Assembly: GCA_001643675.2 (NCBI GenBank)
Contig: LSRY02000028.1
Span: 868,001 to 932,000, forward strand
Direction of reading: 5' to 3'
From: Monocercomonoides exilis PA203
Taxonomy: Eukaryota; Protista; Preaxostyla
DNA: 64,000 nt
Part shown: positions 2,768-34,309 of the stretch, piece after piece
Position numbering within the stretch: position 1 is the first letter of the stretch
How the letters are laid out: every line of letters starts with the position of its first letter
Position numbers and translations under genes: made by a program
The notes under the pieces: generated by a model
Seen by the model: the letters and a program-made list of their open reading frames with translations, nothing else
Database searches by the model: none
What the model was told of the DNA's origin: nothing

Positions 2768-3299
2768 GCAAACATGCTTGGTCTTTTGAGCAATTTAACT
2801 TAAAAGGCATTTGATATTGCAGGTCAGAGGAACTATTTCTTTAGTGATTAAAAAGACAAATGAACAAAGTTGTTTGCGAAAAAGGACAAAATGGAAAAGA
2901 AATACGCAAAAATGTGGAGGGACATATTTAAAATCCTGTTCATAGGAACAAATACGAAGCATTTTACAATGAAATAGATATTTTTTGGATGCAGAGAAAT
3001 GTCTATGAATAAATACTATTAATTATTCATTGTCCATTTTTCTTTTCTTTTCTTTTCTTTTCTTTTCTTTTCTTATTATCTTTTCTGTCGCTTTCTATAT
3101 TTTTATATTAATGTTGGTGAAAGTTAGTAGTGTTCGATATGTATTTGTGTTAAATCATTCCTTGTGGTTTATTACTAATCTGACAATGTATGTATTGTAT
3201 CGCTTGTCAATTTATTGACTTATATTTTTTGATTATTTTGCATGATTATAACTTTCGACTGATATCAATCTGCTTTTTCTGCTTATTTATTCTCACAAT

Positions 3300-4560
3300 T
3301 GGAATATCCAAAAAAGAACTAAGTTTTATATGTTCATAAGGATATTAACCAAAAAAGCACGTCACATTGTTACTTTATTTTCTGAGTTCTTATTTTGCTG
3401 CCTTTGCTGCTGTAATGTTTGATTGATACTTTTGTAGAATCCTTAAGCGGTCATTGCTGCAGTTTATTATTTCTTATGCTTTTCTAATATTTGTCTTCTT
3501 CACTTATGTTTTTAAAATTCTTCTGCTTCTTCTAAATTGACGCTACTTTCGATTAGCAATGTTTCTTTTTCTAACACTTTCATTCTGAATCTTTTATTTT
3601 CACAAAACGCATTCTTAGCTTTATTAGCATGAAATAAAAATTATTTATTTTCAGGTGTTTGTCGTATTTGTTCATTCATCGTTTATGGTGATGATTGGTT
3701 TACACTTTGCAGATGTATTTATTTTGTTTTTCTTTTCTTTCACACAAAAAAAAAAACTTATATTTTGACTTATTTTCCATTTTTGTGGTTTTCTATGGAT
3801 CCTTCGAGCTATCGCCTCATGGTTTCATAGAATTATTATGTTCAGTCTTTTTTCGAATTATTTTTATTTTATTTATTTTATTCATTTTATTTTTGACATT
3901 TACTGATTTGTATTAACAGACTACTACTGTTTTTGAGTTTTTGTTCTTTTCTTCTATTTTATTCGCTTTTGTTTATTCGTCGAGTCTTTTTTATTTTAAT
4001 TTAATTTTTTAAAATCTGTTCAACTAGTTTTTCCTTTCCTTTTCTTTTTTTTTTTTTTATTTTATTTTTTTTTTTTCTTTTCTTTCCTATTTAAATGAAT
4101 TCAAGTTTATTGAATCGATATTATTTAGCTTTTTTCCCAAAAAGAAATCTGAGACGTCAAATTTAAAACTATATTTTCTGGACTGCTTCAGTTGTTGAAG
4201 ATATAATGTTCCATTTAATTATCTTTTTTCATTGAAAGCATTCGAAACAAAATCTTTTTGATGCTTCCTCGTTTTGTTTTTGTGATTAGGTTCCTTTGTT
4301 TTCTTTTCTGAAGATAAGTTTACACTTCTCCCTCCATTATTTTTTTGATTTGCTTCTTTCTTTCTTTCTTTCATGTTTTGTTCTTTTCTATTTTTTCAGC
4401 TATCGTTTTTTTTATTATTTGTACTTGATACCTCTATGACTTTGAATTGTATTTGTTCCTGATCATCTTCTAATGTAGTTTTCCCTCAGGCTGACGAAGT
4501 TAATTTCATTCACCACATACGTCAGAATTTGAGACTGATATTGGTTGATTGATTATTTTT
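3300..4560 (-). pseudogene. Possible decayed coding relic (K/E/N/S-rich, many stops and frameshifts)
   Basis: Minus-strand fragments translate to protein-like stretches (e.g. TTLEDDQEQIQFKVIEVSS, FRMKVLEKETLLIESSVNLEEAEEF) broken by stops. No intact ORF and no recognisable family. Confidence 0.25.
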
Positions 4561-12550: not shown

Positions 12551-13133
12551 AATAGTTGGTCCATTTGAAGCCAAATGTGTTATGATATGATTAATTCGGA
12601 GATATAAGAACACTTCTGATTTCAATGATTGAGGAATGCGCAAGCAGGCGATGAACTGAACTCGGGATCATTTACAGAAAACCTGCCATTCTTTAATGGG
12701 ATCAATTGCCCAATTCATAATTGATTTTTCGTTTACTAACACATGTTTGTTAAACATGATATTGTGAAATCTAAGTCTTTGAAATAATTGCTTTCTATTT
12801 TTATTAACATTTAAAAACTGATGACAAACAATTGATTCGCATTGAATGTTCCCTAATGATTCAAGGGCTCAAAATTTTCAACAATGGTTATAATTTAATA
12901 ATCGTGAATTCTGCAGCCTAATGAGTTACAAATTGCAATAGATTGTTTTGTAACATGCATTAAAGAAGGAAAAAAAATTGCTTTTGAATTATGTACAAAA
13001 TACAGCTGTTTGAAATAAAGGTGAGCGTCAAAAATCAAATAAATACGATATGAAAATACATAAAAGGTAATAAATCCATAGAGACTGATTGTAAGAAAGA
13101 CATTCAAAATAAATAATAATTTTTTAGAATAAA

Positions 13134-13153
13134 TTCCCTCAAGCTTGAGGGAA
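13134..13153. repeat. Perfect 20-bp palindrome TTCCCTCAAGCTTGAGGGAA
   Basis: Self-complementary sequence read directly, lying in the convergent gap between SYF2 and the PKS. Confidence 0.8.
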
Positions 13154-13476
13154 ACAGCACTCGGAAAACTCTCAAACCAAGATGATAGTGTTTATGAACA
13201 TAACAAACATAACATTTCTTGCTAAACGTGGAATCCTTTATCAAATCCCAATAAACAGCAACATATTAGAACTCAAGATTGCAATGACGCCAATTTACAA
13301 CATATCTTTCAATAACATTCTTAATAAACAGAGTGGATAATAATTATAAGAGAATTCAAACAATAAAAAACAAATGAACAAAAAAACATAAAGTTAAAAT
13401 AAAACATAACAAAATTAAATATTAAAATAAAAAATAGAATAAATTCAGGTAAAAAAATTTGGAGCAATAAATTATG

Positions 13477-16400
13477 TTAGTTTTGAACTTCTTCCTTTAC
13501 CAATTGTTCAAGTACTTCTCTGTCGGTTGCAAAAGTCAATATCTCAATCCCACTGTTTACTGCTCCTAATGTTGCTTTTCCTTTTTCAGTCGCATTTGGT
13601 GAAGAACGATTGTTCATACGGATAATAAATTGTTGTATCTTATGTCCTTGTTCTCCTTGTTCTTTCAAACGCATTATCGATTTTGAGAACATTGTAGACA
13701 ATGTTTTTGAAGGCCCAATTTCAATAACTCGGCGGATGCCGTTTAACATAAAGGTGTTTTGAGTGTCAATCCACTGTACAGGTGATGCAAACTGATATGA
13801 AAGTGATTCCCGAAGAAGCAAGCGTGCTTTTTCATTGTTGCTCATAGAGAGCCAAGGGGGGTATGCATTAGACGATGAGGATGATTGTGAATTCTTCATT
13901 CCATGAATAAGTACCATTTCGTTGACACTCGGATCTACAAGTTGTCCAACAGCTTCTCTCAAATACGGTGAGTTGGTGACTGCTATAAGCTGGCGAACGT
14001 AGCTCAGAGAGAGTGAGAATGTTTCCTTGCTATAAGTGTTTGTGATAAATTTGCCTATCAGACGATCAGCGTATGCGAAGGCGTCAACGGAAGGAAGCCT
14101 CGAATCCAAGAAGGAGCGGAAGAGAGGGACAACTTTTCTCAGCACACTCGAGTGGAAAGGCATGTCAATACCTTCAAGGGGCATTACAGAAGTGGTGCGA
14201 GGTAACTTGATTGGTGTTGATGCATAGGGATATGCAGAAATTGCTTCGTAACAGAATCGATCAATCTCACTGAGGATTGATTTTGCGAGCAACTCTTCGT
14301 CGTATTTGAATGATGAATCTTCATTTTTCTTCCGGGTTTGCTCCTCAACGTGTGTAAGTACAATAGAAAGCTGCCAGATAGCATACTTCTCACCAGATAC
14401 GACATATTGATCATTGTAAACATTGTAATTCACGATCTGTAGAAGTCTTCCTCCGCATGAGTTGACAGTGCATTCAATAACATTCTTAAGATGTTCGATC
14501 TTGAACCAAGGAGCCACACGCATTGGTGAAACAGCAGCCATTGCATAGTCAGTCATGTGCGTGACAGGATCACGAGGAACACAGCTCTGCATCACCATTC
14601 CTCGCATGAAGCACACCATTGCCATTTCTTCTGCCGAGGCAATTCCTCCCATCGCTGTCAAGGCGCAATACTCGCCCAATGAATGACCACAGAAAAGATG
14701 TCTATTAGAAAGGTCCTCTTTGATTTGCTTGCTATTTTGATGGCTTCTCAGGCAGGCCAAAGCAACATACTCGTAAATGATGATGATAGGCTGAGCAAAG
14801 TGTGTCATTGAGAGAAGTCCTGTGGGAGAATGGAAGATAAAGTGAGGTGTGTCTGGCGCAACATTCGGGAAAGCACGTGAATTGATTGTTGGATCAACTG
14901 AATGCACTTCTTTCATGACAGCATCATCGTTAGTAATTCTGAAGTTCATGTACTTCTCGCGCAAAATCCTTCCTTTTTCTCCATCAGTGAAATCAATTTT
15001 GTATTCAATTGGATTTTCTCTCACAATTTTCAGAATTGAAATTCCAAGCTCCTCCATAAAGTGGGCATCACATTTGTCCCATATTTCTTTGGCTTCTGGA
15101 TACAGTTCATATATGTCCATTCCAACGCCTGCCTTCAATCCTGATTGGCCTGTGAACACGTAAGCAGTCAATGGCTGCTTCTTTTTCTCCTTATGTTCTT
15201 CAAACTCCTTTTCAGGCAAAGACTGCGCTTTCTCAGTAGCTCGCTCAGACTGCTTGGTTGATGCTGTAGATGCACTTGAGGCGGTACTTGTGCCACTTGT
15301 AGTTGCTTCTCCTGTTTCGGATGGAGTAGACTGTTTTGGTCTCTGGAATTTTTCATAAAACTTGGCCAGCATGCTCCGCGCCAGCTGGTCGGACGATGGT
15401 CCCCTCACAAAGTCAACAACAGGAATGTCAACTTTCACTTGCTTCTCTGTCCAGTTCTTCATTTCAACAGCTGTAAGTGAATCAAGACCATATTGGGAAA
15501 GTGGAACATCTATTGATATCTCTTCTTCTGACGATATACCCAAAACGCGAGCAGATTCTTTGGCAATTGCTTGAGCAAGGAATGCTACAGACTCCTCAGG
15601 GGACACTATTGTCCTCAATGCTTCTGCTACAGAAGCATATTGTCCGCTTTTGCTCGTTGAAGACGATGATGTCGATTCAGTCGCGCTGCCACTTTCATTT
15701 GATTTTGATGTTTCGCTTCGAAGCTCAATTTCTCTGTCGACTTGTTCTTTTATGTACTTAAACCGTCCAGTTTCTGCGAGCGATGCCATGAATGCAAATA
15801 GAGGCTCCCAACTAACATTGAACACGCCTACAGTCACAGGAACTGAAAGCGGATGATTGAACACACGTCTTGCAGCTCGTATGTTTGTTAGAGACTCAGC
15901 TCCATCAAAGAAATGCGATGGATGTTGTGCTTCATTTTCAGGTCGGAGCGAAAATGGACGAAGGCCCATTGGCAGCTTCTTGAATGTTTCTGCCTGAAGC
16001 TGTGCAAGTGATGCGCTAAGAGAATGATGACCAGCGTTCTCTTCGAGGAATCTTTTCCGTCCAATGTGTTCATCCTCAATATCAGCTTGTGCTTCAAGAC
16101 ATGTATGCAGAATTCTATTCGCCCAGTCTGATGAAAATGCTCTGAATCCAAACTGTCCCATATTTGCTCCAAGTGTTGTTGTGTTTCGATGAACATACCC
16201 AACTCCACCAAGCACTCCCCATTGCACAGAAATGCATGGAAGTCCTTGTGATCGTCGATATAATGAAAGTGAATCAAGAAACATGTTTGCTGATCCATAG
16301 TTTGCCTGTCCGTGTGTACCTACAACAACATTCAAAGAAGAAAGAAGCACAAACATTGTGATAGGATCATTATTCCTAACAGTGTCCTCGTGTATCAGCC

Positions 16401-19400
16401 ATGCGCCAAAGGATTTTGGACCAAGAACCTCCCAAAACGCTTTATCATCCAGATTCATCATATACCCATCATGCAAAAGCATAGCACCGTGAATGACACC
16501 AGTAATTGGAGGCATTGTCTTTCTTATCTCAGCCAACATTGCACGAGTTTCCTCTGGTGAAGATGCATCGCACTTGAATACTCTAATATCAGCACCATAT
16601 TTCTTTCGTAATGCTTCAAAGTGCTGTTGACGCGTTGAATCGCCCTTTCCTGAACGAGAAGAGACAGCAAGATACTTTGCTCCTCTTTTCAATAGTCCTG
16701 TGGCCAATGAGAGAGAGAATCCAGCTGTACCACCTGTCACAAGGTATGTCTTTGTTGCATCAATATAGTTTCCTTGCGACTCTGCTCCAATGACTCGGCG
16801 GAAGTGTGGTACGCAGAGTGATGTATATTCATTTGATGAGCTTGTGCACTCACCGCACAAAGGAAGATTAGAAGAAATCGGAGCAATCACAACTTTCCCC
16901 ACATGTCTACCATCTTTCATGAACGAGTAGGCATCTTCAGCTTGAGAGAGTGCAAATGTGGTGACAGGAGGTGGAACAAAAGAGTTTGAACAAAGCAATT
17001 TAGAACATCCATCAAACACCTCAGATAAAATATCGTCATTATCATAAATGAATTGATCTATGGCTACAACTCTGTATGTAATATTGGAAATGAATGGAAG
17101 AAGAGAAACCATTGTTCCTTGATACAAGTCAACTTTTCCGATTTCAACAAATACTCCTCCTTTGCACAATGAAGATAGTCCAGCATGTATCAGCTCTTGC
17201 GACGGAAGAGAGTTCAGAACAATATTTACACCTTTTCCATTTGTGATCTTTTTGCATTCTTGTGCGAATGCAGGTGATTCTGATGAAAGAACATATGGAA
17301 CTCCCATCTTTGAAAGATAGTTTCGCTTCCATTCTGATCGTGTTGTAACAATTGGAATGGCACCGAAGTGTCTGCATAGAGATATGGCACACAATCCAAT
17401 TCCACCGCTTCCAGCATGGATCAGCACATAATCACCTTTTTTCACCTTGGCAACAGTAACCAACGAATAATATACAGTGCTCATCTCCAACCCAATGGCA
17501 CCAAGTTGATCCCATGAATACTTACCATCATTTGGACATAATCCAACATTCTTTTCGTGTACAACCGTGTACAGGCCACAGCACTCCCTTCCAACACCAA
17601 ACACTCTATCGCCAACTTTCACACGAGTCACGCCATCTCCAATTCGACGTACTATTCCAGCAAATTCAATACCCAAGTTAGAACCTTGCCTTGCATTCTC
17701 TGGAAGCTGCCACGTCCACATCATCACATCTCGATAAACAACACCAGATGCTGCCACTTCAACCTCAACTTCTCCAGCTGGCAACTCCGCCATTCGGAAA
17801 CGCTCTTCAAGACATAAAAGATTTTTCCTTGGTGTTGTTAACGTGTAATAAGATTCAGAAGCTCCTGTGCAACTGGATGAAGATGCAGAAGAAGCAGAAG
17901 CAGAAGCAGAAGCAGATGAATTTGAAGATGGTGCAAGCGGAATACTTGGAAGAGATTTTTCCACAAGTGCTAATTCTGAGCTATCGTGGAATTGAATAAG
18001 ACGCTGTCCAAAGCATTTGTTACCTCTAACTGCAATTTCTGTCTCGCATAGTTCAACAACAGCAGATGTTGGTGCTTTTATTGATGGAGAGCTTCCTTCT
18101 TTTTCGGCCTTTTCCTTTGCATCAAGGGCTGTTGAGCTGAGAATACCCACAACTCCACTGACTTCAGTGCTTCCAGGACATCTTGCAATGTCGAGCGAAC
18201 GAGGATGAACGGAGTCGAGCTCGTTGATAATGGATCTGTTAAGTCCCCATATGGTTGACTGCCCAAGACCAACTTCACCTTTCACCATTCCCTGTGAGCG
18301 TCCAGTCACACACCACACTCCTTCTGTCACTCCCCAAGTGGTTATGTGCGAAGAAACAGCTGGTGTCTTTGAAGCATCCATCAGAGCATGCGCCATATAC
18401 AATGGTGAATAAATATTCATTTCAAAACCATGTTTCACTTCATCTTCAGTCTTTGCAACACATGGCAGATCAAGTGACCAGAGATGGACAAGTGCAACGA
18501 TTGCAGGCAACTTCTTTTCTGTCACGAGATTGAAAATGGAATCATAGCCATCACGCTTTGTTGAAGCATCAGGAATATATATCGCATAAAAGTTTTGTAG
18601 AAATGCAGATATTTCTTTCTCATCAAGCAGAGATCCATACGGCTTTTGTGGATCATTTGGAAGAACATTTTGTGAAGATGCGCAAAGTTGATGAAGAAGC
18701 GATGCAGAGTCACTCTCTTTGGCATTCGGAAGTGGTGAATGTGTTGCTCCAATGACGATATGGCCATCCCGAAGAAGAGAAGAAATGAGTCTCCCTGAAA
18801 CGAGGTTCCTATCTTCCACAAATACAACGCATGTTGTTGTTGCCTTGGATTTGCCTGCCTCAGTTGCGTGCTCAATCCATTCTTGTTTCTTTTCAGAGAA
18901 AAGAGCGATTTGCTTGTCAATCTGTTCTTTTGGTAATTGAGATGCCTGTGCAACAGTAACACCCAAACGTGCAAATATCTTCTTTTGTTGAGAATCACCT
19001 TGAATTCCAGCTGTCCATTCATTAAATACATGACTTGATGAAAACCCAGTCTCTTTCAATATATCTCTCCACATGTCCGGGGTCAACAATGGATGCTGTC
19101 TGAATTTTGTATCTTTGAGTGCCCACCATCCGTCGGTTAATCCAAAGACAATATCAAGCCATTTCAGTCCGCTCAAAGCTTCGAGAAGTATTAAGTACCC
19201 TCCTGGCTTGAGAAGCTGTTGAATGTGAGAAAGTGTAGCAGACAGATCAGATGTGGCATGAACAACATTCGCTGCAATGATGATATCCTGTGAGTGTGGC
19301 TCAAAGCCTTGCTCTACTGGAGAATTCTCGATGTTTAACGTCTGGAAATTCATGAAAGATGCATAGCGAGAGAAACGTTGTTTTGCCGTTCCAAAGAAAG

Positions 19401-22400
19401 ATGCTGAAATGTCGGTGTATGTGTACGTTGTGGTAAGCGGATCCAAAAACTCCATCAAATATGCAGTTGTTCCACCAGTTCCTGCTCCAACTTCAAGAAT
19501 TTTCAGCGGACAATCACTTTTTGTCTCTTTTAGCACAGTTTCTTCTTCAGAAAGTCCAGCTGCCTCTTTGTTCTTCTTCTGTGCTTGCACCGCTGCAACA
19601 AGCCTTTGCAAGACACCCTGTGTCACATAGTTCAGTGTACGCACCTCTCCATCGTCTCTGTAAACAGCATCAGCAAGCCCTTTATCTTTAAAGATCAATG
19701 TGACTGCATTTTCACCGTCCACAATCACATCTTTCATCCTTCGCCCAACATCCATCATGAGAGTGGTAGAAGGGCGCATTTGAGGGTATTTTGTAAGAAT
19801 CTCAGCAGCCAATGCGTTGCAGTCTTCGTTGTGAGGAAGTGTCTGCGTTTCATCATGGAAGAACGGTGCTAATGGAGCTATAACATAGTTTTCAATGAAG
19901 AATGTGGGTTCAGTGTTCGCTTTTTGTTGAGCTTCTGGAGTTAATGACAAAGTTAGATATCCAGCCTCAGAAAGATAGCGGGATAGAAGCAAGAAGAGTC
20001 TGTGATAGAACGGAAGAATATTTACGGATTCAGCAAGTTGTTTCACTGGAATAGCTTTGATTGCAGAAACGTCAATCTTCTTTGAGCGAATCAGCTCAGC
20101 TTCTTCTTTCCATAGATTCAATTTTGATCTGAAAACTTCGAGAATAATAGCAACAGTAAGCGTGTTATTCATTGGAACAACAACATCTGCCATTTCCTTT
20201 GTCTGAAATTCTGATCCTATTCCGTTCATCATCGCATTGCATTCTTCTAAAAATTGAGCGTTGTCAAGAGAAGGAAGTCCTGTGGTATTTCCAAAATCTT
20301 TGTCCAGTTCATCAAAGGAAATTATTGGAAATGCAGCTGATTTCGATTGTGTTTCGCTCGATGAAGATGGCAGAGTTGCAATCTGCTCCCATTTGTGTTC
20401 AAACATCGGAGTTTCTGCTCCACCAATCATTCCCAGTTTGCTTCCTCTTTTTCCTGATTCCAAATATCGAATAAGAACATCCTGAAGAGATCCATACACT
20501 TTTCCTTCGTCATCACAGCATGTCATAGACAGTCGCCCAGTGATTGGATCCTTGCGAGATAATGACCAGCAATGTCTTGCCGTCTTTGGCACTGATCTGA
20601 TAAAGCTCGCACGCACAGCCTCAACAGGGAAGAATGCACCTCTTTTCTCTCTGGCTGACAGACCTGACTGCAAGCAGGAGTCGAGGAAAGGAGGATACAT
20701 AAATCCCCACTTCCCGAGCTCTTCTTCGGTTGTCTCTGGATTGACTTCAATGTAGGCAAGTGACATTAAAGGATTGTCTCTGTCATTGATCCAAATTCGT
20801 CTTGTAAGACGCAACTGGCGTTTAAGTTCCAGTCCATCTGTCCAAAGCTGGGCGAAGAATTGGTCGATTGGTATTTCGATAGGGCACATCTTTCTGTACG
20901 CATCGAGATCAATTGTATCAAACGCTTGACTTGGCTGCGAAGGAACAAAGTCTGGCTGAAGGAGCGGGATTGTTGTTAACTGTTGCTTTTCTCTCTTAAT
21001 CACTTCCTCTTCAGCTTCCATCACAACAGCACAGTGCAACGTGAACTCACCTTTTGGAAGAACACGAGAAGATAATGTGACATTGTATGCATTAACTGTA
21101 GCAGAACGGGAGCCTGGCTTGTGGATAGGATCAAATGAAATATTCACTCTGACCGTTTCTCCTTTGTTCATATAGAATGCATTCAGAAACTGCACATCTC
21201 GCAGCCAGAAAGGTCTGTCTCCAAATACTCTTCGTCCACAAGTCAATATACACTCCACAAAAGTCACTCCAGGAACGACAATGTTTCCTTGCAGGCAATG
21301 GTCCAGCACCCACGGGATGTGTGATGTAGATATATCACTCTGCCAGCAAGGGTTGAGTGTGTCTTGTCTAATTCTCGCAATGGGGTGTCCATCAGCTGGA
21401 CCCAAACGATGCTCATGTTGCATTGGAGACTCATTCCAGCACTGTGTTCGTGTCCATGCGTACAATGGCAGTCCTTCAACAAAGCAGTACTCACTCACAT
21501 CCTCTTTTGCAGACAATGAGGACTCTTCGAACAAAACACGTGCTTTTCGTTCGTCGTATGTGTTGTATGGCACAAACACAGACTTCTTCAAATCCAAATT
21601 GTACCCAAGACAATACACGTTTGCCAGGGATCGCAGCATCAGCATTCTTTCATTTTCAGCTTTTCTCAATAGTGTTGGAACATAAATGAAAGGCTTTCCT
21701 TCCGAACCCATAATTTCTCCGAGGAATGTTCGAAGCACGTTGTGGGGCCCACATTCCAAGAATACCCATTCGATTTCCTTTGCAGAATGGCTTGATCCAT
21801 CTTCCTTTTTATCTTCATCTTCCTCGTTTTTTACTGAATCCTCGTCTCCTGAAGAATCTGTAGACGTTCGCCTAATCATCTCTAGAATGGCTCCCATAAA
21901 TTGTACAGGGTTACGCAATGATGCCCACCAATACTCTCCATCCATTTTCACTTCCTTTTCCAAGGGTGTATATGTTGATACAAGTGGTGTTGAAGGTCGT
22001 AGAGGTGTGATTCCTTTCAGCCCTGAAATGATCTGATCGTGAACAAGATCCACATACTGTGAATGCATTGGCTCGTCAACAAGAAGCCTTCTGACACGAA
22101 TTGATGATTCTTCGTTTTCAGTTGCAACTCTTTCCACTTCGTTCATGTCTTCAGTTTCGCCTGAAATATTCCAACGCGTTGGTGCGTTGTGTCCTGCAAT
22201 ATCCACTTTCTTTCCTTCAATCAGAGATAAAAGATCATCTTTCTCGCCAGTGACAGCAGCCATATGACCCATTCCGTTGCAGAACTTTTGTCCTTTCGAA
22301 CGCTCCCATGCAACGCGAGTCGCATCTTCAATTGATAAAGCTCCAGAAACATGAGCAGCAGCAATCTCTCCCAGTGAATGTCCGACAATGATATCAGGCT

Positions 22401-24324
22401 TCACACCAGCGGCTTCCATCACTTTGTAAACGCAAACCTGGATGGCAAAGAAGATTGGTTGAAGATATTCCACTTGATCTACATGGGATGTTTCCTCTGT
22501 TCCTGTGATAATTTCCTCGACAATTGAATATTCTGCTCCGAGTTCCTTCAGGCAATTGTCTATTCTATCCATCCATTCTCGAAATACAACATTTTCTCTG
22601 TATAGTTCTCTTCCCATTCCGTACCATTGCGATCCTTGTCCACAGTAAACAAGGCACAGCTTTCTCAACTTTTCAGTAGGTGTTAATGAAGCAAACCGAG
22701 TTTGGACAATTCCTGTATCTTTCTCGTCATTCACAAAAGCTCTAAGTTCTGCAATTGCTTTCTCTTTTGAGTCAGCTACAAAGGCAAGCCTACACTGCTT
22801 GTGTTGTGTTCGATGGCAGCCAAGTGTATATGCTACATGCTGTATTGGTGCCGATGATGGCATTTCCAAATAATCTGCAAGTCGTTTCGCTTGTTCTTTC
22901 AATGACTCAACAGAACGAGCAGAAAGCAGAAACAGTTCATCTCTTTCGATTTCTTTTACACCACTCTTCACATCTTTCAATCCTTTGCCTCCTCTGTATT
23001 CTTGAATTACACATCCACCATTCGTGCCTCCAAAGCCAAAGGCTGAAACAAGTGCAGAGCGAGGAACTTCTGGCCGTAGAGGAGCTGGGAATTTTGTTGT
23101 TGTTGTAACTATTTTCATGTTAAGCTTTTTCAAGTCAATGTTCGGATTAGCTTTTTTCACATTTATTGTTGGAGGAATAACTCCATGCTTCATCACCATA
23201 GCCATTTTAATCAACGAAACGATACCTGCTGCAGGTTCTAAATGCCCAACATTTGACTTTGCTGAACCGATGAGAATTGGATTTCCAGTATCACGCCCAA
23301 TATTAAGCACAGAACTAACTGAGCGACATTCAATAGGATCTCCAACAAAAGTACCTGTTCCATGAGATTCAACATAAGTAATGTCAGCTGTTGATATACT
23401 AGACTTTCTCAGCACTTCTCGAATCACAACAGCTTGCTGCTGCTCAGATGGAGATGTCATTTGTTGTTGATAATGGCCATCCGACCCAACGTGGGTTCCT
23501 CTGATAACTGCAAAAATTCGATTACCATCCCTTTCTGCATCAGACAAACGTTTCAAAAGGACCATTCCACATCCTTCAGATCTCACGTATCCATTTGCTT
23601 TTGCATCAAATGCCTTGCAATGTCCGTCTGGAGAGAGCACTCCAAGTTTTGAAAATCCAATTGAAATTTCGGGAAACATCATTAAATTTACTGCTCCGCA
23701 TAACGCTGAATCGCATTCGTGAGTTCTCATCGACTGGCAAGCACAATTTAATGCAACAAGCGTTGAAGAGCAAGCAGTGTCTACAATGAATGAAGGACCA
23801 ATAAGATTGTAAAAATATGATATGCGATTTGCAACGATTGAAGTAGAAACGCCAGTTTGTGTGTGAACATCAATCGTATTAATGTCCGGAAATTGTAAAT
23901 GTGAATAATCTGTTGCAGAGATTCCAACAAAAACTCCAGTTCGACTTCCGCTCATCTGCTCAAGTGCAACTCCTGCATTTTCGAAAGTTTCATAAGTAAC
24001 TTCTAGCAATAGTCTCTGATTTGGATCAAGGGTCTTAGCTTCTCTTGGCGATAAATAGAAGAATTTCAAATCTACCTCATCGATATTATATCCTTTCAAA
24101 AAGCCACCCTTATCTTGAATAGATTTACCAACAAGTCCAAGGTTTTCCGGATCATGGAAATATTTCCCATCCCAACGATCCTTTGGAATATCAGTTATTG
24201 CATCATAACCTTCAAGAAGCAAGTTCCAAAACTGTTCAGGTGAGTTTGCACCCCCTGGCAAACGCGCACCAAGTCCAACAATGGCTATTGGATCCTGGGG
24301 CCCCAATAAATCTTCAGAAATCAT
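13477..24324 (-). CDS. Iterative highly reducing type I PKS/FAS: KS-AT-DH-cMT-ER-KR-ACP plus C-terminal fungal-FAS-type MPT domain (3615 aa, intronless)
   Basis: KS: DPIAIVG, DTACSS, ESHGTGT, KSNVGHLEPAAG. AT: GQGSQW, GHSLGE. DH: WVLDHCLQGNIVVPG, LDSCLQ. cMT: ILEVGAGTGG, IIAANVVHAT. ER: LIHAGSGGIG. KR: YLVTGGTAG, GQANYGSAN. ACP: GLDSL (Ser at 15478-15480). MPT: YVFTGQ, GHSLGEY, IVNYNV, PFHS, YQFASPVQWIDTQ, VIEIGP. The probable ATG is 24324 (MISEDLLG); the ORF upstream of it is AT-rich and looks non-coding. Confidence 0.95.
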   Translation of the reverse strand: MISEDLLGPQDPIAIVGLGARLPGGANSPEQFWNLLLEGYDAITDIPKDRWDGKYFHDPENLGLVGKSIQDKGGFLKGYNIDEVDLKFFYLSPREAKTLDPNQRLLLEVTYETFENAGVALEQMSGSRTGVFVGISATDYSHLQFPDINTIDVHTQTGVSTSIVANRISYFYNLIGPSFIVDTACSSTLVALNCACQSMRTHECDSALCGAVNLMMFPEISIGFSKLGVLSPDGHCKAFDAKANGYVRSEGCGMVLLKRLSDAERDGNRIFAVIRGTHVGSDGHYQQQMTSPSEQQQAVVIREVLRKSSISTADITYVESHGTGTFVGDPIECRSVSSVLNIGRDTGNPILIGSAKSNVGHLEPAAGIVSLIKMAMVMKHGVIPPTINVKKANPNIDLKKLNMKIVTTTTKFPAPLRPEVPRSALVSAFGFGGTNGGCVIQEYRGGKGLKDVKSGVKEIERDELFLLSARSVESLKEQAKRLADYLEMPSSAPIQHVAYTLGCHRTQHKQCRLAFVADSKEKAIAELRAFVNDEKDTGIVQTRFASLTPTEKLRKLCLVYCGQGSQWYGMGRELYRENVVFREWMDRIDNCLKELGAEYSIVEEIITGTEETSHVDQVEYLQPIFFAIQVCVYKVMEAAGVKPDIIVGHSLGEIAAAHVSGALSIEDATRVAWERSKGQKFCNGMGHMAAVTGEKDDLLSLIEGKKVDIAGHNAPTRWNISGETEDMNEVERVATENEESSIRVRRLLVDEPMHSQYVDLVHDQIISGLKGITPLRPSTPLVSTYTPLEKEVKMDGEYWWASLRNPVQFMGAILEMIRRTSTDSSGDEDSVKNEEDEDKKEDGSSHSAKEIEWVFLECGPHNVLRTFLGEIMGSEGKPFIYVPTLLRKAENERMLMLRSLANVYCLGYNLDLKKSVFVPYNTYDERKARVLFEESSLSAKEDVSEYCFVEGLPLYAWTRTQCWNESPMQHEHRLGPADGHPIARIRQDTLNPCWQSDISTSHIPWVLDHCLQGNIVVPGVTFVECILTCGRRVFGDRPFWLRDVQFLNAFYMNKGETVRVNISFDPIHKPGSRSATVNAYNVTLSSRVLPKGEFTLHCAVVMEAEEEVIKREKQQLTTIPLLQPDFVPSQPSQAFDTIDLDAYRKMCPIEIPIDQFFAQLWTDGLELKRQLRLTRRIWINDRDNPLMSLAYIEVNPETTEEELGKWGFMYPPFLDSCLQSGLSAREKRGAFFPVEAVRASFIRSVPKTARHCWSLSRKDPITGRLSMTCCDDEGKVYGSLQDVLIRYLESGKRGSKLGMIGGAETPMFEHKWEQIATLPSSSSETQSKSAAFPIISFDELDKDFGNTTGLPSLDNAQFLEECNAMMNGIGSEFQTKEMADVVVPMNNTLTVAIILEVFRSKLNLWKEEAELIRSKKIDVSAIKAIPVKQLAESVNILPFYHRLFLLLSRYLSEAGYLTLSLTPEAQQKANTEPTFFIENYVIAPLAPFFHDETQTLPHNEDCNALAAEILTKYPQMRPSTTLMMDVGRRMKDVIVDGENAVTLIFKDKGLADAVYRDDGEVRTLNYVTQGVLQRLVAAVQAQKKNKEAAGLSEEETVLKETKSDCPLKILEVGAGTGGTTAYLMEFLDPLTTTYTYTDISASFFGTAKQRFSRYASFMNFQTLNIENSPVEQGFEPHSQDIIIAANVVHATSDLSATLSHIQQLLKPGGYLILLEALSGLKWLDIVFGLTDGWWALKDTKFRQHPLLTPDMWRDILKETGFSSSHVFNEWTAGIQGDSQQKKIFARLGVTVAQASQLPKEQIDKQIALFSEKKQEWIEHATEAGKSKATTTCVVFVEDRNLVSGRLISSLLRDGHIVIGATHSPLPNAKESDSASLLHQLCASSQNVLPNDPQKPYGSLLDEKEISAFLQNFYAIYIPDASTKRDGYDSIFNLVTEKKLPAIVALVHLWSLDLPCVAKTEDEVKHGFEMNIYSPLYMAHALMDASKTPAVSSHITTWGVTEGVWCVTGRSQGMVKGEVGLGQSTIWGLNRSIINELDSVHPRSLDIARCPGSTEVSGVVGILSSTALDAKEKAEKEGSSPSIKAPTSAVVELCETEIAVRGNKCFGQRLIQFHDSSELALVEKSLPSIPLAPSSNSSASASASASSASSSSCTGASESYYTLTTPRKNLLCLEERFRMAELPAGEVEVEVAASGVVYRDVMMWTWQLPENARQGSNLGIEFAGIVRRIGDGVTRVKVGDRVFGVGRECCGLYTVVHEKNVGLCPNDGKYSWDQLGAIGLEMSTVYYSLVTVAKVKKGDYVLIHAGSGGIGLCAISLCRHFGAIPIVTTRSEWKRNYLSKMGVPYVLSSESPAFAQECKKITNGKGVNIVLNSLPSQELIHAGLSSLCKGGVFVEIGKVDLYQGTMVSLLPFISNITYRVVAIDQFIYDNDDILSEVFDGCSKLLCSNSFVPPPVTTFALSQAEDAYSFMKDGRHVGKVVIAPISSNLPLCGECTSSSNEYTSLCVPHFRRVIGAESQGNYIDATKTYLVTGGTAGFSLSLATGLLKRGAKYLAVSSRSGKGDSTRQQHFEALRKKYGADIRVFKCDASSPEETRAMLAEIRKTMPPITGVIHGAMLLHDGYMMNLDDKAFWEVLGPKSFGAWLIHEDTVRNNDPITMFVLLSSLNVVVGTHGQANYGSANMFLDSLSLYRRSQGLPCISVQWGVLGGVGYVHRNTTTLGANMGQFGFRAFSSDWANRILHTCLEAQADIEDEHIGRKRFLEENAGHHSLSASLAQLQAETFKKLPMGLRPFSLRPENEAQHPSHFFDGAESLTNIRAARRVFNHPLSVPVTVGVFNVSWEPLFAFMASLAETGRFKYIKEQVDREIELRSETSKSNESGSATESTSSSSTSKSGQYASVAEALRTIVSPEESVAFLAQAIAKESARVLGISSEEEISIDVPLSQYGLDSLTAVEMKNWTEKQVKVDIPVVDFVRGPSSDQLARSMLAKFYEKFQRPKQSTPSETGEATTSGTSTASSASTASTKQSERATEKAQSLPEKEFEEHKEKKKQPLTAYVFTGQSGLKAGVGMDIYELYPEAKEIWDKCDAHFMEELGISILKIVRENPIEYKIDFTDGEKGRILREKYMNFRITNDDAVMKEVHSVDPTINSRAFPNVAPDTPHFIFHSPTGLLSMTHFAQPIIIIYEYVALACLRSHQNSKQIKEDLSNRHLFCGHSLGEYCALTAMGGIASAEEMAMVCFMRGMVMQSCVPRDPVTHMTDYAMAAVSPMRVAPWFKIEHLKNVIECTVNSCGGRLLQIVNYNVYNDQYVVSGEKYAIWQLSIVLTHVEEQTRKKNEDSSFKYDEELLAKSILSEIDRFCYEAISAYPYASTPIKLPRTTSVMPLEGIDMPFHSSVLRKVVPLFRSFLDSRLPSVDAFAYADRLIGKFITNTYSKETFSLSLSYVRQLIAVTNSPYLREAVGQLVDPSVNEMVLIHGMKNSQSSSSSNAYPPWLSMSNNEKARLLLRESLSYQFASPVQWIDTQNTFMLNGIRRVIEIGPSKTLSTMFSKSIMRLKEQGEQGHKIQQFIIRMNNRSSPNATEKGKATLGAVNSGIEILTFATDREVLEQLVKEEVQN

Positions 24325-24503
24325 AAATATTCGCTCGCAAAAATCTTTACAGATCTTAACACCCATACAAACTATTTTCAATCGAAAAATCAAAATAGTT
24401 ATGTGATAATCATTTTTTGTTAATTTTAAACTGAAATGCAATATATTTTCAGACTTAAATGAATAAAAAATTGATATGGCATTAATGATCATAATTTATT
24501 TGA
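24325..24503. promoter_or_regulatory. Divergent promoter region (179 bp) shared by the PKS and POLR3C
   Basis: Head-to-head ATGs at 24324 (-) and 24504 (+). Confidence 0.5.
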
Positions 24504-31475: not shown

Positions 31476-32118
31476 TCACTCGCCCCACAGCTGTGCCTTT
31501 TTCTCCAGCAGCGAAAAGAGCGGCGGCTCAATCTCGTTGATGCGCTGGCAGAACTCGTCCCAGTCCTGTCTGCTCGACACCAGAAACGCCAGCATCATCG
31601 ACGGGTCGATGTTCGCCATGTTGATGGAGAGGATGTTCTTCTGGTGGAATGTGTGCATCATCGGCTCAATCTGCTCTCTTTTGGTGACGGCTGGCTGTGT
31701 TACGTGCGGATCCAGATAGAACAGCCGGTTCTGCTGCACCCCAACAAACCAGTACGACGAGCGGGGCTTGCCGCCCACAATGCCGAGGGTGAAAGGGAGG
31801 GTGAAGATCGCTCTGAGTGAAGGGTAGTAAACTGGATTCACACTCTCCACGCCCAGCCTCACTGGCACTAGCAGCACCAGCGGATGCCACGGGCCAGACG
31901 GAGGGGCAAGAGCAGTATTCGGCACAAGAGAAGAGGTGGAGCAAGAGAACTTCCCGTCGGCTGTCCAGGCGGAGGGGGAGCCAGGACGCACAGCTGTGGA
32001 GCGCCCACGCTGTCTGATGTATGAGATGGACTCGAAGGTCGATGGAGAGGACGAGGCAGACGCGAATGTGGGTGCTCGGCGGAAGCGGAAGAAGGCAGAG
32101 GAGCCAGTTTTGGAGGAG

Positions 32119-32150
<32 letters not shown>

Positions 32151-34277
32151 GGAGGAAGATGATGACGATGATTTGGATAAGCTGGCTGCAAGAGAAGGAG
32201 CAGAAGAGGCAGATTTCATATAAGAGACAGAGCCAGATATGTCTGGCAGACTGGGGCATTTGTATGCTCCTCTGTCTTCTTTCTCCTTCCCTGTGCCATC
32301 TGTGCTGTTGCCATCCTCTTTCTCTCCTTTGTTCTCCTCCTCTTCTTCTTCCTCTTCCTCTCTCTCCTTCCCTCTGCTGTTATCTCTTGGGGCATCTTCT
32401 ATTTCAGAGAGATCAATTGTGCGTGTTGAGTACAGTGTGTGAATTGGATCATCTGTTGTCTGAAGGGGCCTCGGCGGTTCAACAGGGAATGGATGGAGGG
32501 ACAGCGGCTGAAGAGAGGAGGAGGTGCTGGTGAGGCTGGATGCTTCTTCAGTGAAGACAGAGGAAGACAAAGAAGAAGAAGAAGAAGAAGCAACAGAAGA
32601 AGCAGGTGATGACGAAGAAGAAGATGTTGATGAAATTGAAGAAAACGATGCTGACGAAGGTCTGGTTGAAGGGTTGAGCATGCCACGTGAGGGTGTTGCA
32701 GCATAAGCAGCAGGAAGGCTTCCATTTTGAGAGAGAGAAGAAGAATGAAGGCGATTCAGCGGCGTTTCACCGACCAGCTCGAAGTTCGTAAGCGACTCGT
32801 CGTCGCTCTCGTTTTCGCTTTCGGAAGCATTTTGAGATGTTTTGGGGGAGATGAGAGTGGAAGAAGGGACGATCTCTTTGGAAGGAAGATTCTTGTGTGC
32901 TGTGGATGAGGGAGAGCGAAATGAAGAAGAGGGGGAAGATGAATTAGATGAATTAGATGAGGATGGCGATGATGGTGATTGAGATGAAGATATAGAAGAA
33001 GAAGAAGAAGAAGAAGAAGAAGAAGAAGAAGAAGAAGAAGAAGAAGAAGAAGAAGAAGAAGAAGAAGAAGATGATGATGATGATGATGATGATGATAAGG
33101 CATTTGAAGAGCGAACAGAATCGTCGGGAGAAATGTTGAGTTTTTCAGTGATTGCCTGAGAGATGGCAGAAGAGACAGAGAGAGGGGTGGAGTGTGGTGA
33201 GGAGATAAATGACTGATATGGCGAGGTTGGAATAGAAGAAGGAGAAGACGATGCTCCGATGGAGATGGAAGAGATGGAAGAGATGGAAGGGACAGAGGAA
33301 GGAAGAGAAGCACCAGAAGACAGCTGGATGGAGCGGAGTGAGGGCAATATGGGGATTGGGTGTGAGTGGGGCGAGCTTATTGGAGAGATCTGAGAAGGAA
33401 GAGGAAGTTTTGGGGCAGAAGAGTCGGAGCCAGAGAGGATGGATGTTTCTGTGGCGGTGGTGAGGGAGGTGGTGAGGGAGGTGGCGAGCGAAGGAGAGGA
33501 AGAGAGGTGATCAGCCTGGTGAGTGGAAGAAGAAGAAGAGAGAGCATTCGACACAACCTGTGGAGAAGGTGGGTCAGAACACGTGGACGACGGAGAAATA
33601 GAAGCAGAGCGGAGGATGGCGGGGGCAGGGAGAGGGGTGAAGAAGGAGGATGAAGTGTCTGTGGAGGAGCGGGAGCTGATGGAAGAGGCAGAGGGAGAGA
33701 AGGTGCGGCTGGGTGAAAGAGAGGCGTGGGAAGGAGAGAGACAGGTTGACTGTATATTCGGTGAGGTTGAAGAAGAAGAGGATGATGATAAAGTTGTCGT
33801 TGAACATGAATTGTTGTTTGAATTAGAAGAAGAAGAAGATGATGATGATGATGTCGAAGAAGCCAATGTTCCATTTTGAGATGTCTGTGCCTGTGATTGC
33901 AGCATCGGGCTTACTGGCGATTGGCCCTTCAGAGGAGACGCTGCTCTTGCTGTGTGTTTTGCTTCTGCTTCTTCTTTGTCTTCCTCTTTCCTCAAAAACG
34001 AATGTGCGAAAGAGGCTGAAAGCGATGTTGGTTTTGAGAGATAGAACGGCTCAGAAGTGTTTGTGAAGGAGGAGAGAGAGAGAGAAAGACGGGCAAGAGA
34101 AGAGGGGCAGGTGAGCATGGCGCCTGTGTGCTGCTGAGAGAGGATGACAGGCATGTTGGCTGGCTGCTGGAGAGGAGAGGAGACTGTGATTGAGCTGCTG
34201 CTGGTGTCATCAGGTGAATGAGGGGATAGCCCAGCAGAAGATGAAGAAGAGGAAGAAGAAGCAGAAGGAGATGTTGG

Positions 34278-34309
<32 letters not shown>

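What the first reader, a model, noticed from the sequence alone, without database searches (positions are those of the whole stretch)
13477..15180. HR-PKS/animal-FAS-type module terminated by a complete fungal-FAS MPT domain: a chimeric synthase that probably releases acyl-CoA
Seen: after the ACP and a Ser/Thr linker, the last ~560 aa read TAYVFTGQSG..GMDIYE..EIWDKCDAHF..SILKIVRENP..GEKGRILREKY..GLLSMTHFAQP..GHSLGEYCAL..RGMVMQSCVPRD..IVNYNVYNDQYVVSG..PLEGIDMPFHS..YQFASPVQWIDTQ..VIEIGP. Established: this is collinear with the malonyl/palmitoyl transferase of fungal/mycobacterial barrel-type FAS I. It includes both the part ending yeast Fas1 and the part starting Fas2, here contiguous. MPT releases finished chains onto CoA, whereas KS-AT-DH-cMT-ER-KR-ACP synthases normally end in TE, R, C, carnitine-acyltransferase-like or no domain. 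Inference: an MPT was taken out of its barrel context and used as the release domain, so the enzyme would deliver methyl-branched acyl-CoA directly to lipid synthesis. I do not know of a described synthase with this architecture.
Basis: partly seen in the sequence, partly recalled or inferred. Interest (0 to 1): 0.93.

Follow-up and report, generated by a model that had tools for sequence, protein, structure and literature searches.

The report
Oxymonad polyketide synthase ending in FAS-type MPT
The mitochondrion-less protist Monocercomonoides exilis and its oxymonad relatives carry expressed giant lipid-building enzymes in which a bacterial-style polyketide synthase ends in the loading/unloading domain of yeast-type fatty acid synthase, an undescribed combination that probably hands its product to coenzyme A.

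Summary
Window 13477-24324 (minus strand) is one uninterrupted gene of Monocercomonoides exilis with the domain order KS-AT-DH-cMT-ER-KR-ACP, a 56-residue linker and a 510-residue C-terminal domain.

That last domain is a full malonyl/palmitoyl transferase (MPT) of barrel-type FAS I:
- It matches fungal FAS beta 1666-2050 (E 2e-68) and the FAS alpha N-terminus, contiguously.
- The AlphaFold model matches the yeast MPT domain (TM 0.89).
- Every residue invariant in the aligned MPT set is kept, including the Ser, His and carboxylate-binding Arg.
- In trees it lies inside the barrel-FAS MPT radiation, far from PKS acyltransferases, including the enzyme's own.

The fusion is not an artefact. It occurs in three M. 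exilis paralogues, in Blattamonas and, with the MPT region only, in Streblomastix. It also occurs on metagenome contigs, one of them from a GC-richer organism. Contigs from RNA libraries span the junction.

The genome has no other barrel-FAS part. Its other PKS genes end in a thioesterase where I could read the end. I found no paper describing this architecture, and the M. exilis genome paper reported finding no short-chain fatty-acid synthesis components.

Release of the product as acyl-CoA is the most economical mechanism but remains an inference. The conserved Arg suggests the domain may still also handle malonyl. I rate it a new variant of a known kind, of moderate to high interest.

The parts
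13477..24324 (-). Whole coding sequence of the PKS-MPT megasynthase. It starts at Met57 of the long ORF, has 3615 codons plus the stop at 13477-13479, and has no intron.
   Evidence: ORF list and translation. It is 100% identical to the public M. exilis protein P0001 apart from a 13-residue gap in that gene model. RNA-library contigs tile 13005-18800 with no differences and no joints.
23158..24294 (-). Ketosynthase (KS). The active-site Cys241 codon is 23770-23772. The two His motifs HGTGT and GHLE are present.
   Evidence: Pfam PF00109/PF02801. Motifs are conserved in five oxymonad proteins. It is 49% identical to bacterial modular PKS KS domains.
21643..22650 (-). Internal cis-acyltransferase (PKS type). 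It has GHSLGE with the Ser706 codon at 22375-22377, the Arg of WERS, and an unusual EPMH specificity motif.
   Evidence: Pfam PF00698. Motifs were checked. In the tree it lies a very long branch away from the terminal MPT.
20449..21357 (-). Dehydratase (DH), with the HxxxGxxxxP and DxxxQ motifs.
   Evidence: Pfam PF21089/PF14765; motifs.
19003..19575 (-). C-methyltransferase (cMT). It has the SAM motif LEVGAGTGG, NVVHAT and LLEA.
   Evidence: Pfam PF08242 and related models. PDB hits are the CurJ, LovB, PsoF and citrinin PKS methyltransferases. Motifs are conserved.
16885..17778 (-). Enoylreductase (ER). The NADPH loop HAGSGGIG is canonical in this copy.
   Evidence: Pfam PF08240/PF00107/PF13602. 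The loop is degenerate in paralogue 2 and in both Blattamonas proteins.
16210..16749 (-). Ketoreductase (KR), with GGTAGFS and the catalytic Tyr in ANYGSAN.
   Evidence: Pfam PF08659; motifs.
15349..15573 (-). PKS-type acyl carrier protein. The GLDSL Ser3005 codon is 15478-15480.
   Evidence: Pfam PF00550 / PF23297. The motif is identical in all five oxymonad proteins. It is not the fungal Fas_alpha_ACP type.
15181..15348 (-). Ser/Thr/Lys-rich linker between ACP and MPT. It is poorly conserved (31-37% identity).
   Evidence: Translation, per-region identity, and pLDDT below 50 for the first 16 residues of the model.
13648..15180 (-). Terminal malonyl/palmitoyl-transferase (MPT) domain of barrel-FAS type. 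Key codons are Gln3116 at 15145-15147, nucleophile Ser3271 at 14680-14682, carboxylate-binding Arg3297 at 14602-14604 and His3447 at 14152-14154.
   Evidence: PDB phmmer hits, invariant columns, AlphaFold model with pLDDT 90.9, Foldseek match to the yeast MPT domain with TM 0.89, trees, coordinates.
13480..13647 (-). C-terminal tail of 56 residues after the MPT. It is poorly conserved (25-32%) and is partly predicted as helices.

Best explanation
This is a real, expressed gene of the oxymonad Monocercomonoides exilis. It is one of three paralogues and belongs to a family shared with Blattamonas, with Streblomastix (MPT region only) and with uncultured relatives.

The gene encodes a single-module, fully reducing, C-methylating type I polyketide/fatty-acid synthase (KS-AT-DH-cMT-ER-KR-ACP). 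Its body is bacterial in type. Its C-terminus is a complete and apparently active MPT domain derived from a eukaryotic barrel-type FAS I.

Proposed mechanism (inferred, not shown):
1. The module works iteratively.
2. The internal AT loads extender units onto the PKS-type ACP.
3. The chain is reduced and, at some cycles, methylated.
4. The ACP then presents the finished acyl chain to Ser3271 of the tethered MPT.
5. The MPT passes the chain to free CoA, as yeast MPT does with palmitoyl.

The product would therefore leave as acyl-CoA, ready for ER elongases and glycerolipid acyltransferases. The reaction is reversible and the malonyl-binding Arg is retained, so the same domain may also load malonyl or acyl-CoA primers.
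For: Shown here:
- Architecture and intact motifs of every domain.
- The terminal domain matches fungal FAS beta MPT at E 2e-68 and also the FAS alpha N-terminal segment.
- All residues invariant in a 46-sequence MPT alignment are kept, including GQ, GHS, Arg213 and His363 of the 587-residue piece. The Ser-to-Arg spacing is 26, as between yeast S1808 and R1834.
- The AlphaFold model has pLDDT 90.9. Foldseek gives TM 0.89 to the isolated yeast MPT domain and 0.84 to the M. tuberculosis MPT.
- In a 94-row tree the oxymonad-type MPTs form one clade (SH-aLRT 99) within barrel-FAS MPTs. A 100-supported, very long branch separates them from cis-AT domains, including this protein's own AT. A careful 46-row tree gives 100/99 for the clade.
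- The MPT is conserved at 57-74% between species, like the catalytic domains, while the linker and tail are at 25-37%. This indicates purifying selection.
- There is no TE, R, C or carnitine-acyltransferase domain anywhere in the protein.
- A FAAL-primed bimodular PKS in the same genome ends in an ordinary thioesterase.
- The same ACP-to-MPT junction occurs in independent assemblies: three loci in this genome, Blattamonas and JGI contigs. Streblomastix contributes fragments that cover the MPT region only.
- RNA-library contigs span the junction, e.g. unitig 14530-15463 in all four runs.
- The genome supplies what the enzyme needs: a PPTase candidate and ACC carboxyltransferase loci.

From the literature:
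- Yeast MPT loads malonyl and unloads the finished acyl chain to CoA through one Ser (PMC5353594).
- M. exilis has malonyl-CoA-dependent ER elongases and glycerolipid synthesis, but no recognised short-chain FAS (PMC6759080).
Against: - No biochemical data exist for any family member.
- The protein has two apparently active acyltransferases, both with the carboxylate-binding Arg. Which one loads and which one unloads cannot be read from sequence.
- Retention of the Arg over a long, fast-evolving stem argues that malonyl (or another carboxy-acyl) transfer is still selected in the MPT.
- The ER NADPH loop is degenerate in paralogue 2 and in both Blattamonas proteins. Products probably differ among members and need not be saturated fatty acids.
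- Iterative use is assumed from the single-module layout.
- The RNA evidence consists of assembled contigs from one study, which cannot exclude DNA carry-over.
Confidence: 0.6

Rival explanations
1. The terminal MPT is mainly the malonyl loader, that is, the extender-unit transferase. The internal AT has another job, such as loading a starter or methylmalonyl. Product release would then be by hydrolysis or by a separate enzyme.
For: The malonyl-binding Arg and all catalytic residues are invariant in every oxymonad-type MPT, including the divergent P0178. Yeast MPT is the malonyl loader. The internal AT carries an unusual EPMH/EAMH motif in place of the usual HAFH/YASH specificity motif, and Blattamonas has AHS instead of GHS.
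Against: The internal AT also keeps its Ser, His and Arg, so it looks competent for a carboxylated extender. No other release domain exists in the protein. In fungal FAS, malonyl loading and acyl unloading are not separable activities of the MPT, so this rival mostly overlaps the main reading rather than replacing it.
Confidence: 0.2
2. The MPT works as a primer loader. It takes scavenged long-chain acyl-CoA onto the ACP, in the way a starter-unit transacylase does. The module then adds a few methyl-branched units, as mycocerosic acid synthase does with acyl-CoA primers.
For: The MPT reaction is reversible (established knowledge of the family). M. exilis feeds on bacteria and its medium is rapidly depleted of fatty acids (PMC12308965). 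The KS-AT and ER-KR regions have mycocerosic acid synthase among their best solved relatives.
Against: A C-terminal position after the ACP is typical of release domains, not loaders. This reading still leaves release unexplained, unless the same domain also unloads. No data exist on primers.
Confidence: 0.12
3. The terminal domain is a non-catalytic or structural remnant, for example a dimerisation or docking element. Alternatively the fusion is an assembly or annotation artefact.
For: The tail and linker are poorly conserved. The public gene model does contain one doubtful 39-nt intron elsewhere in the gene.
Against: All catalytic and family-invariant residues are kept. Between-species conservation equals that of the catalytic domains. 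There are three uninterrupted ORFs in this genome. The same junction occurs in other species and metagenomes. RNA-library contigs span it.
Confidence: 0.03

Closest known systems
MPT domain of fungal and other eukaryotic barrel-type FAS I (yeast Fas1 C-terminus plus Fas2 N-terminus; single-chain versions in oomycetes, Kickxellomycotina, Thecamonas and Carpediemonas)
   Same: It is homologous over the whole domain, including the segment that yeast encodes on the alpha subunit. The fold is the same (TM 0.89). The Ser/His/Arg/Gln active-site set is the same. It lies inside this clade in trees.
   Different: It is not embedded in a barrel. There is no DH upstream, no FAS-type ACP downstream and no other barrel part in the genome. 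It is tethered to a PKS-type ACP and lies at the protein's C-terminus. It sits on a long stem branch and is only 33-36% identical to barrel MPTs.
Bacterial fully reducing cis-AT PKS modules and mycocerosic-acid-synthase-like iterative PKS (CurL/CurJ, Lsd14, MAS)
   Same: The KS-AT-DH-(cMT)-ER-KR-ACP order is the same. These are the best solved-structure matches for KS-AT and ER-KR. The KS is 46-49% identical to bacterial modular PKS KS domains.
   Different: Those enzymes pass the chain to a next module, a TE, or a separate acyltransferase such as PapA5 (from memory). None is known to me to carry an MPT. This one is a eukaryotic nuclear gene.
Fungal highly reducing PKS with a C-terminal carnitine-acyltransferase (cAT) release domain (recalled from the literature, not re-read here)
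   Same: The concept is the same: an acyltransferase, not a thioesterase, at the C-terminus of an HR-PKS that moves the product to a small-molecule acceptor, reversibly.
   Different: The fold and family are unrelated. The cAT is a choline/carnitine acyltransferase, and Pfam finds none here. The acceptor there is carnitine or a polyol, not CoA.
Animal FAS
   Same: The overall megasynthase layout is the same, with a (pseudo)methyltransferase position between DH and ER.
   Different: Animal FAS releases free palmitate through a TE and uses one MAT for loading. It is a more distant sequence relative (KS-AT 335 bits, against 560 for CurL).

Membership tests
Barrel-type FAS I malonyl/palmitoyl transferase (MPT) domain | Full-length sequence homology to MPT, including the segment contributed by the FAS alpha N-terminus | tested here: met
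   FAS beta 1666-2050 at E 2e-68 and FAS alpha 7-76 at E about 1e-9; single-chain FAS proteins align contiguously to query residues 21-525.
Barrel-type FAS I malonyl/palmitoyl transferase (MPT) domain | Catalytic Ser-His dyad, GQ oxyanion motif and carboxylate-binding Arg 26 residues after the Ser | tested here: met
   G31 Q32, G185 H186 S187, R213 and H363 are invariant in 46 sequences, including all oxymonad-type ones. One search gives the roles of yeast S1808 and R1834.
Barrel-type FAS I malonyl/palmitoyl transferase (MPT) domain | MPT fold (FabD-like core with the enlarged MPT subdomains) | tested here: met
   pLDDT 90.9. TM 0.89 to the yeast MPT domain 9pqz_G and 0.84 to M. tuberculosis MPT 9pqy_A. 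FabD proteins match with far weaker E-values.
Barrel-type FAS I malonyl/palmitoyl transferase (MPT) domain | Phylogenetic placement among MPTs, apart from PKS cis-AT domains | tested here: met
   a 100-supported branch of length about 4.7 on each side separates MPTs from six cis-AT domains; the clade is nested among eukaryotic barrel-FAS MPTs. FabD proteins themselves were not in the tree.
Barrel-type FAS I malonyl/palmitoyl transferase (MPT) domain | Location inside a barrel FAS polypeptide (DH upstream, FAS-type ACP downstream) | tested here: not met
   it is preceded by a PKS-type ACP and followed only by a 56-residue tail; the genome has no Fas1 helical domain; only three MPT loci exist, all at PKS C-termini.
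Barrel-type FAS I malonyl/palmitoyl transferase (MPT) domain | Malonyl-CoA:ACP and acyl-ACP:CoA transferase activity | not testable with these tools
   This needs enzyme assays.
Type I fully reducing (HR) PKS / FAS-like megasynthase | KS-AT-DH-(cMT)-ER-KR-ACP order with intact catalytic motifs | tested here: met
Type I fully reducing (HR) PKS / FAS-like megasynthase | A canonical chain-release domain (TE, reductase, condensation or carnitine acyltransferase), or none | tested here: not met
   the only domain after the ACP is the MPT-type acyltransferase.
Type I fully reducing (HR) PKS / FAS-like megasynthase | Iterative use of the single module | not testable with these tools
   This is inferred from the single-module layout and the absence of partner modules. 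There is no direct evidence.
Fungal HR-PKS with cAT release domain | C-terminal choline/carnitine acyltransferase-fold domain | tested here: not met
   Searches find no such Pfam family. The terminal domain is Acyl_transf_1 (FabD/MPT fold).

The most novel reading that the evidence does not exclude
These PKS-MPT enzymes are the overlooked de novo fatty-acid synthases of amitochondriate oxymonads. They would be a third architectural solution to type I FAS: a bacterial-derived PKS body that kept only the CoA-unloading MPT of an ancestral metamonad barrel FAS. On this reading they make (possibly methyl-branched) acyl-CoA directly for membrane lipids. This would fill the gap that the genome paper reported for short-chain fatty-acid synthesis.
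Probability: 0.3. Interest if true: 0.85.

Novelty: new variant of a known kind. Interest (0 to 1): 0.64.

Why it matters
If the MPT does unload to CoA, it is a natural example of a portable, CoA-dependent release domain that works with a PKS-type ACP. PKS and FAS engineers have wanted such a domain for making acyl-CoA products directly.

For protist biology, it gives a concrete candidate for how the best-known eukaryote without mitochondria obtains acyl chains. The genome paper reported finding no short-chain fatty-acid synthesis components (PMC6759080).

For evolution, it shows a barrel-FAS domain surviving on its own after fusion to a PKS of bacterial type. A complete barrel FAS is still present in another metamonad, Carpediemonas, so a vertical remnant origin is possible.

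Tried and rejected
- Complex prediction of the ACP (residues 2955-3055) with the MPT (3100-3630) gave no verdict (score 0.00, controls not run). It counts neither for nor against docking.
- The KS-AT search with the search for homologous proteins was swamped by multi-module bacterial PKS, whose scores sum over modules. It cannot identify a nearest neighbour.
- I did not build a proper KS tree. No eukaryotic reference PKS/FAS sequences were available as referable ids. Only similarity rankings are given.
- The exact donor of the MPT is unresolved. The sister was a long-branched Coemansia paralogue in the 94-row quick tree. In the careful tree it was a weakly supported protist assemblage. A clade of oxymonads with Carpediemonas is not rejected (p-AU 0.35), but it is not shown either.
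- Literature searches for the architecture found nothing. The library lacks most subscription journals.
- Two equal-length 1376-codon ORFs elsewhere in the window looked like a duplication but are unrelated.
- The first attempt at the alignment script timed out, and one Pfam call exceeded the size limit. Both were repeated correctly.
Full report
**What is in the sequence**

The window carries a single open frame of 3671 codons on the minus strand, 13477-24492. The public protein for it is a Monocercomonoides exilis entry named only 'putative polyketide synthase PksE' (P0001). P0001 starts at Met57 (window 24324). It is otherwise identical to the ORF, except that the gene model removes 13 residues as a 39-nt intron.

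Pfam gives KS 67-445, AT 615-872, DH 1046-1348, cMT 1666-1767, ER 2239-2536, KR 2582-2761 and a PKS-type ACP 2974-3048. It also gives a second Acyl_transf_1 hit in the last 587 residues.

**Identity of the terminal domain**

- Sequence against solved structures:
  - The best hit of the last 587 residues is fungal FAS beta-subunit residues 1666-2050 (E 2e-68).
  - Residues 469-537 separately hit the first ~70 residues of FAS alpha subunits (E ~1e-9).
  - Mycobacterial FAS I scores 1e-31, a trypanosome acyltransferase-like protein 1e-23, and FabD proteins 1e-10 or worse.
- Single-chain FAS proteins of oomycetes and early fungi align contiguously to residues 21-525.
- A 46-sequence alignment shows that every column invariant across the aligned barrel-FAS MPTs is also kept in the oxymonad sequences. 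These include GQ (31-32), GHS (185-187), Arg213 and His363.
- The Ser-to-Arg spacing of 26 equals that between yeast S1808 and R1834. In yeast, S1808 carries both malonyl loading and acyl unloading, and R1834 binds the malonyl carboxylate (PMC5353594).
- An AlphaFold model built on that alignment is confident (pLDDT 90.9, pTM 0.90). Foldseek places it on yeast, Candida and Thermomyces FAS beta chains, with TM 0.89 to the isolated yeast MPT domain and 0.84 to the M. tuberculosis MPT.

**Phylogeny of the terminal domain**

- In a 94-row tree, a 100-supported and very long branch separates the barrel-FAS MPTs from six cis-AT domains, including this protein's own internal AT. The oxymonad-type sequences form one clade (SH-aLRT 99) inside the MPT radiation.
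- A careful 46-row tree gives 100/99 for that clade. Bacterial (CMN and myxobacterial) MPTs split off at 100/100.
- That tree places the oxymonad clade in a weakly supported (88/92) group with oomycetes, the apusomonad Thecamonas and the metamonad Carpediemonas. It does not place it with the named fungi (identities).
- Carpediemonas has a complete single-chain barrel FAS.
- A clade of oxymonads plus Carpediemonas is not rejected (p-AU 0.35).
- The donor is therefore unresolved. A remnant of an ancestral metamonad barrel FAS remains possible.

**The fusion is real and conserved**

- The genome (82.3 Mb, 101 contigs) holds exactly three loci with this domain. Each lies at the end of an uninterrupted ORF of 3533-3672 codons.
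- The same architecture occurs in Blattamonas nauphoetae: P0005 and P0006 full-length, and P0176 as cMT-ER-KR-ACP-MPT.
- Streblomastix strix fragments match the MPT region at 47-53% identity. They do not reach the ACP, so they cannot show the junction.
- It also occurs on JGI metagenome contigs: P0004 (ER-KR-ACP-MPT) and P0342 (ACP-MPT).
- A more distant contig (L004, protein P0178) is collinear from the end of the KR through the ACP and linker to the MPT, at 32% identity. Its GC content is 55%, so it comes from a different organism.
- In the tree the three M. exilis copies group together and the Blattamonas copies group together. The fusion therefore predates these genera, and the paralogues arose later.
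- Contigs from four RNA libraries of one study tile 13005-18800 with no differences and no splice joints. One unitig (14530-15463) runs from inside the ACP through the linker into the MPT. Coverage ends about 470 nt past the stop codon. These are assembled contigs from RNA libraries. They show presence in RNA libraries, not a proven single transcript.

**State of the other domains**

- Catalytic motifs of KS, AT, DH, cMT, KR and ACP are intact in all five full-length proteins.
- The ER NADPH loop is canonical in this copy and in paralogue 3. It is degenerate in paralogue 2 and in both Blattamonas proteins. Products probably differ among members.
- Between species the MPT is 57-74% identical, similar to the cMT, DH and KR. 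The linker and tail are 25-37% identical. This points to selection on the MPT.
- The PKS body resembles bacterial PKS:
  - KS-AT scores 560 bits against CurL and 510 against mycocerosic acid synthase. It scores 440 against Dictyostelium PKS16, 392 against LovB and 335 against animal FAS.
  - The KS is 46-49% identical to KS domains of myxobacterial and other bacterial modular PKS. It is 37-45% identical to the KS domains of the other M. exilis PKS genes.
  - An embedding search also returns bacterial clusters.
  - These are similarity rankings, not a phylogeny.

**Genomic context of the pathway**

- The genome has six type I KS-containing genes. These are the three PKS-MPT genes, two bimodular genes on contig 28 and one on contig 5.
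- One of the contig-28 genes reads FAAL-ACP-KS-AT-KR-ACP-KS-AT-DH-ER-KR-ACP-TE. It therefore uses an ordinary thioesterase for release.
- No Fas1 helical domain exists in the genome, so no barrel FAS remains.
- A PPTase candidate and acetyl-CoA carboxylase-type carboxyltransferase loci are present.
- The M. exilis genome paper reports ER elongases that use malonyl-CoA and full glycerolipid synthesis. [quoted passage not shown] These synthases were evidently not considered there.

**Mechanism**

What is shown: the terminal domain is a complete MPT with its full catalytic equipment, under selection. It is tethered by a flexible linker to a PKS-type ACP, in a protein with no other release domain.

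What is inferred: the domain transfers the finished chain from the ACP to CoA, as in yeast. The product would then leave as acyl-CoA, which elongases and acyltransferases can use directly.

The Arg is conserved and the reaction is reversible. Malonyl loading or primer loading by the same domain therefore cannot be excluded. Sequence alone cannot assign roles between the two acyltransferases. An attempt to model ACP-MPT docking gave no verdict.

**Novelty**

I found no paper describing a PKS or FAS ending in an MPT. The only mention of M. exilis together with PKS in the library concerns FAAL domains. The proteins are in public databases under generic and mutually inconsistent names.

All the parts belong to known families, but the combination and the implied release chemistry are new. 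I therefore class it as a new variant of a known kind, restricted as far as seen to oxymonads and one unidentified GC-richer organism.

Noticed in passing
window 21220-21260 region (ORF residues 1081-1093): The public gene model P0001 removes 13 residues (CILTCGRRVFGDR) just after the DH HxxxGxxxxP motif, as a 39-nt intron. The stretch is in frame and is conserved in all five full-length oxymonad proteins, so the intron is probably an annotation artefact.
   Followed up: partly
G000:C28:1017376-1033086 and G000:C28:712396-728370 (loci L011/L006/L009 and L012/L007/L010): There are two uninterrupted ORFs of 5237 and 5325 codons, each with two KS domains. The first reads FAAL-ACP-KS-AT-KR-ACP-KS-AT-DH-ER-KR-ACP-TE, a FAAL-primed bimodular PKS with an ordinary thioesterase. 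I did not read the domain order of the second.
   Followed up: partly
G000:C5 about 1337000-1347000 (locus L008): This is a sixth PKS gene (AMP-binding, ACP, KS, AT, then DH and KR). It is split into two open frames at about L008:3760-3792 by a stop or an intron. Both ends run off the fetched piece.
   Followed up: no
paralogue at G000:C2 (P0002) and Blattamonas P0005/P0006, ER domain: The NADPH-binding glycine loop of the ER is degenerate (TGATGATG, HNAADAIG, HNATEAVG), against canonical HAGSGGIG in the window copy. Some family members may therefore lack enoyl reduction.
   Followed up: partly
L004:1-200 (JGI contig of P0178): Upstream of the ACP-MPT part, the KR-like sequence has in-frame stops. 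The position of the catalytic Tyr reads Ile. This could be an intron, a degenerate KR or a pseudogene in an unidentified organism with 55% GC.
   Followed up: partly
protein P0238 (Carpediemonas membranifera) and P0189 (Thecamonas trahens): Both protists encode complete single-chain barrel-type FAS I (AT-ER-DH-MPT-ACP-KR-KS-PPT). The Thecamonas model carries an extra DnaJ/zuotin part at its end, which is probably a merged neighbouring gene.
   Followed up: partly
PDB 7pua/7pub chain Fg (Trypanosoma brucei): A 550-residue 'acyl transferase-like protein' in mitoribosome assembly intermediates is a clear relative of the MPT domain (E 1.5e-23, Foldseek E 1e-19). This is another case of an MPT-like domain outside a barrel FAS.
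   Followed up: no
window 31476-35606 (minus strand): This 1376-codon ORF has long GAA/AGA/GAT triplet runs, which explains the strong GC skew of 32-34 kb. The N-terminus contains a GWGC motif that I recalled as Atg4-like (peptidase C54). I ran no domain search on it.
   Followed up: no
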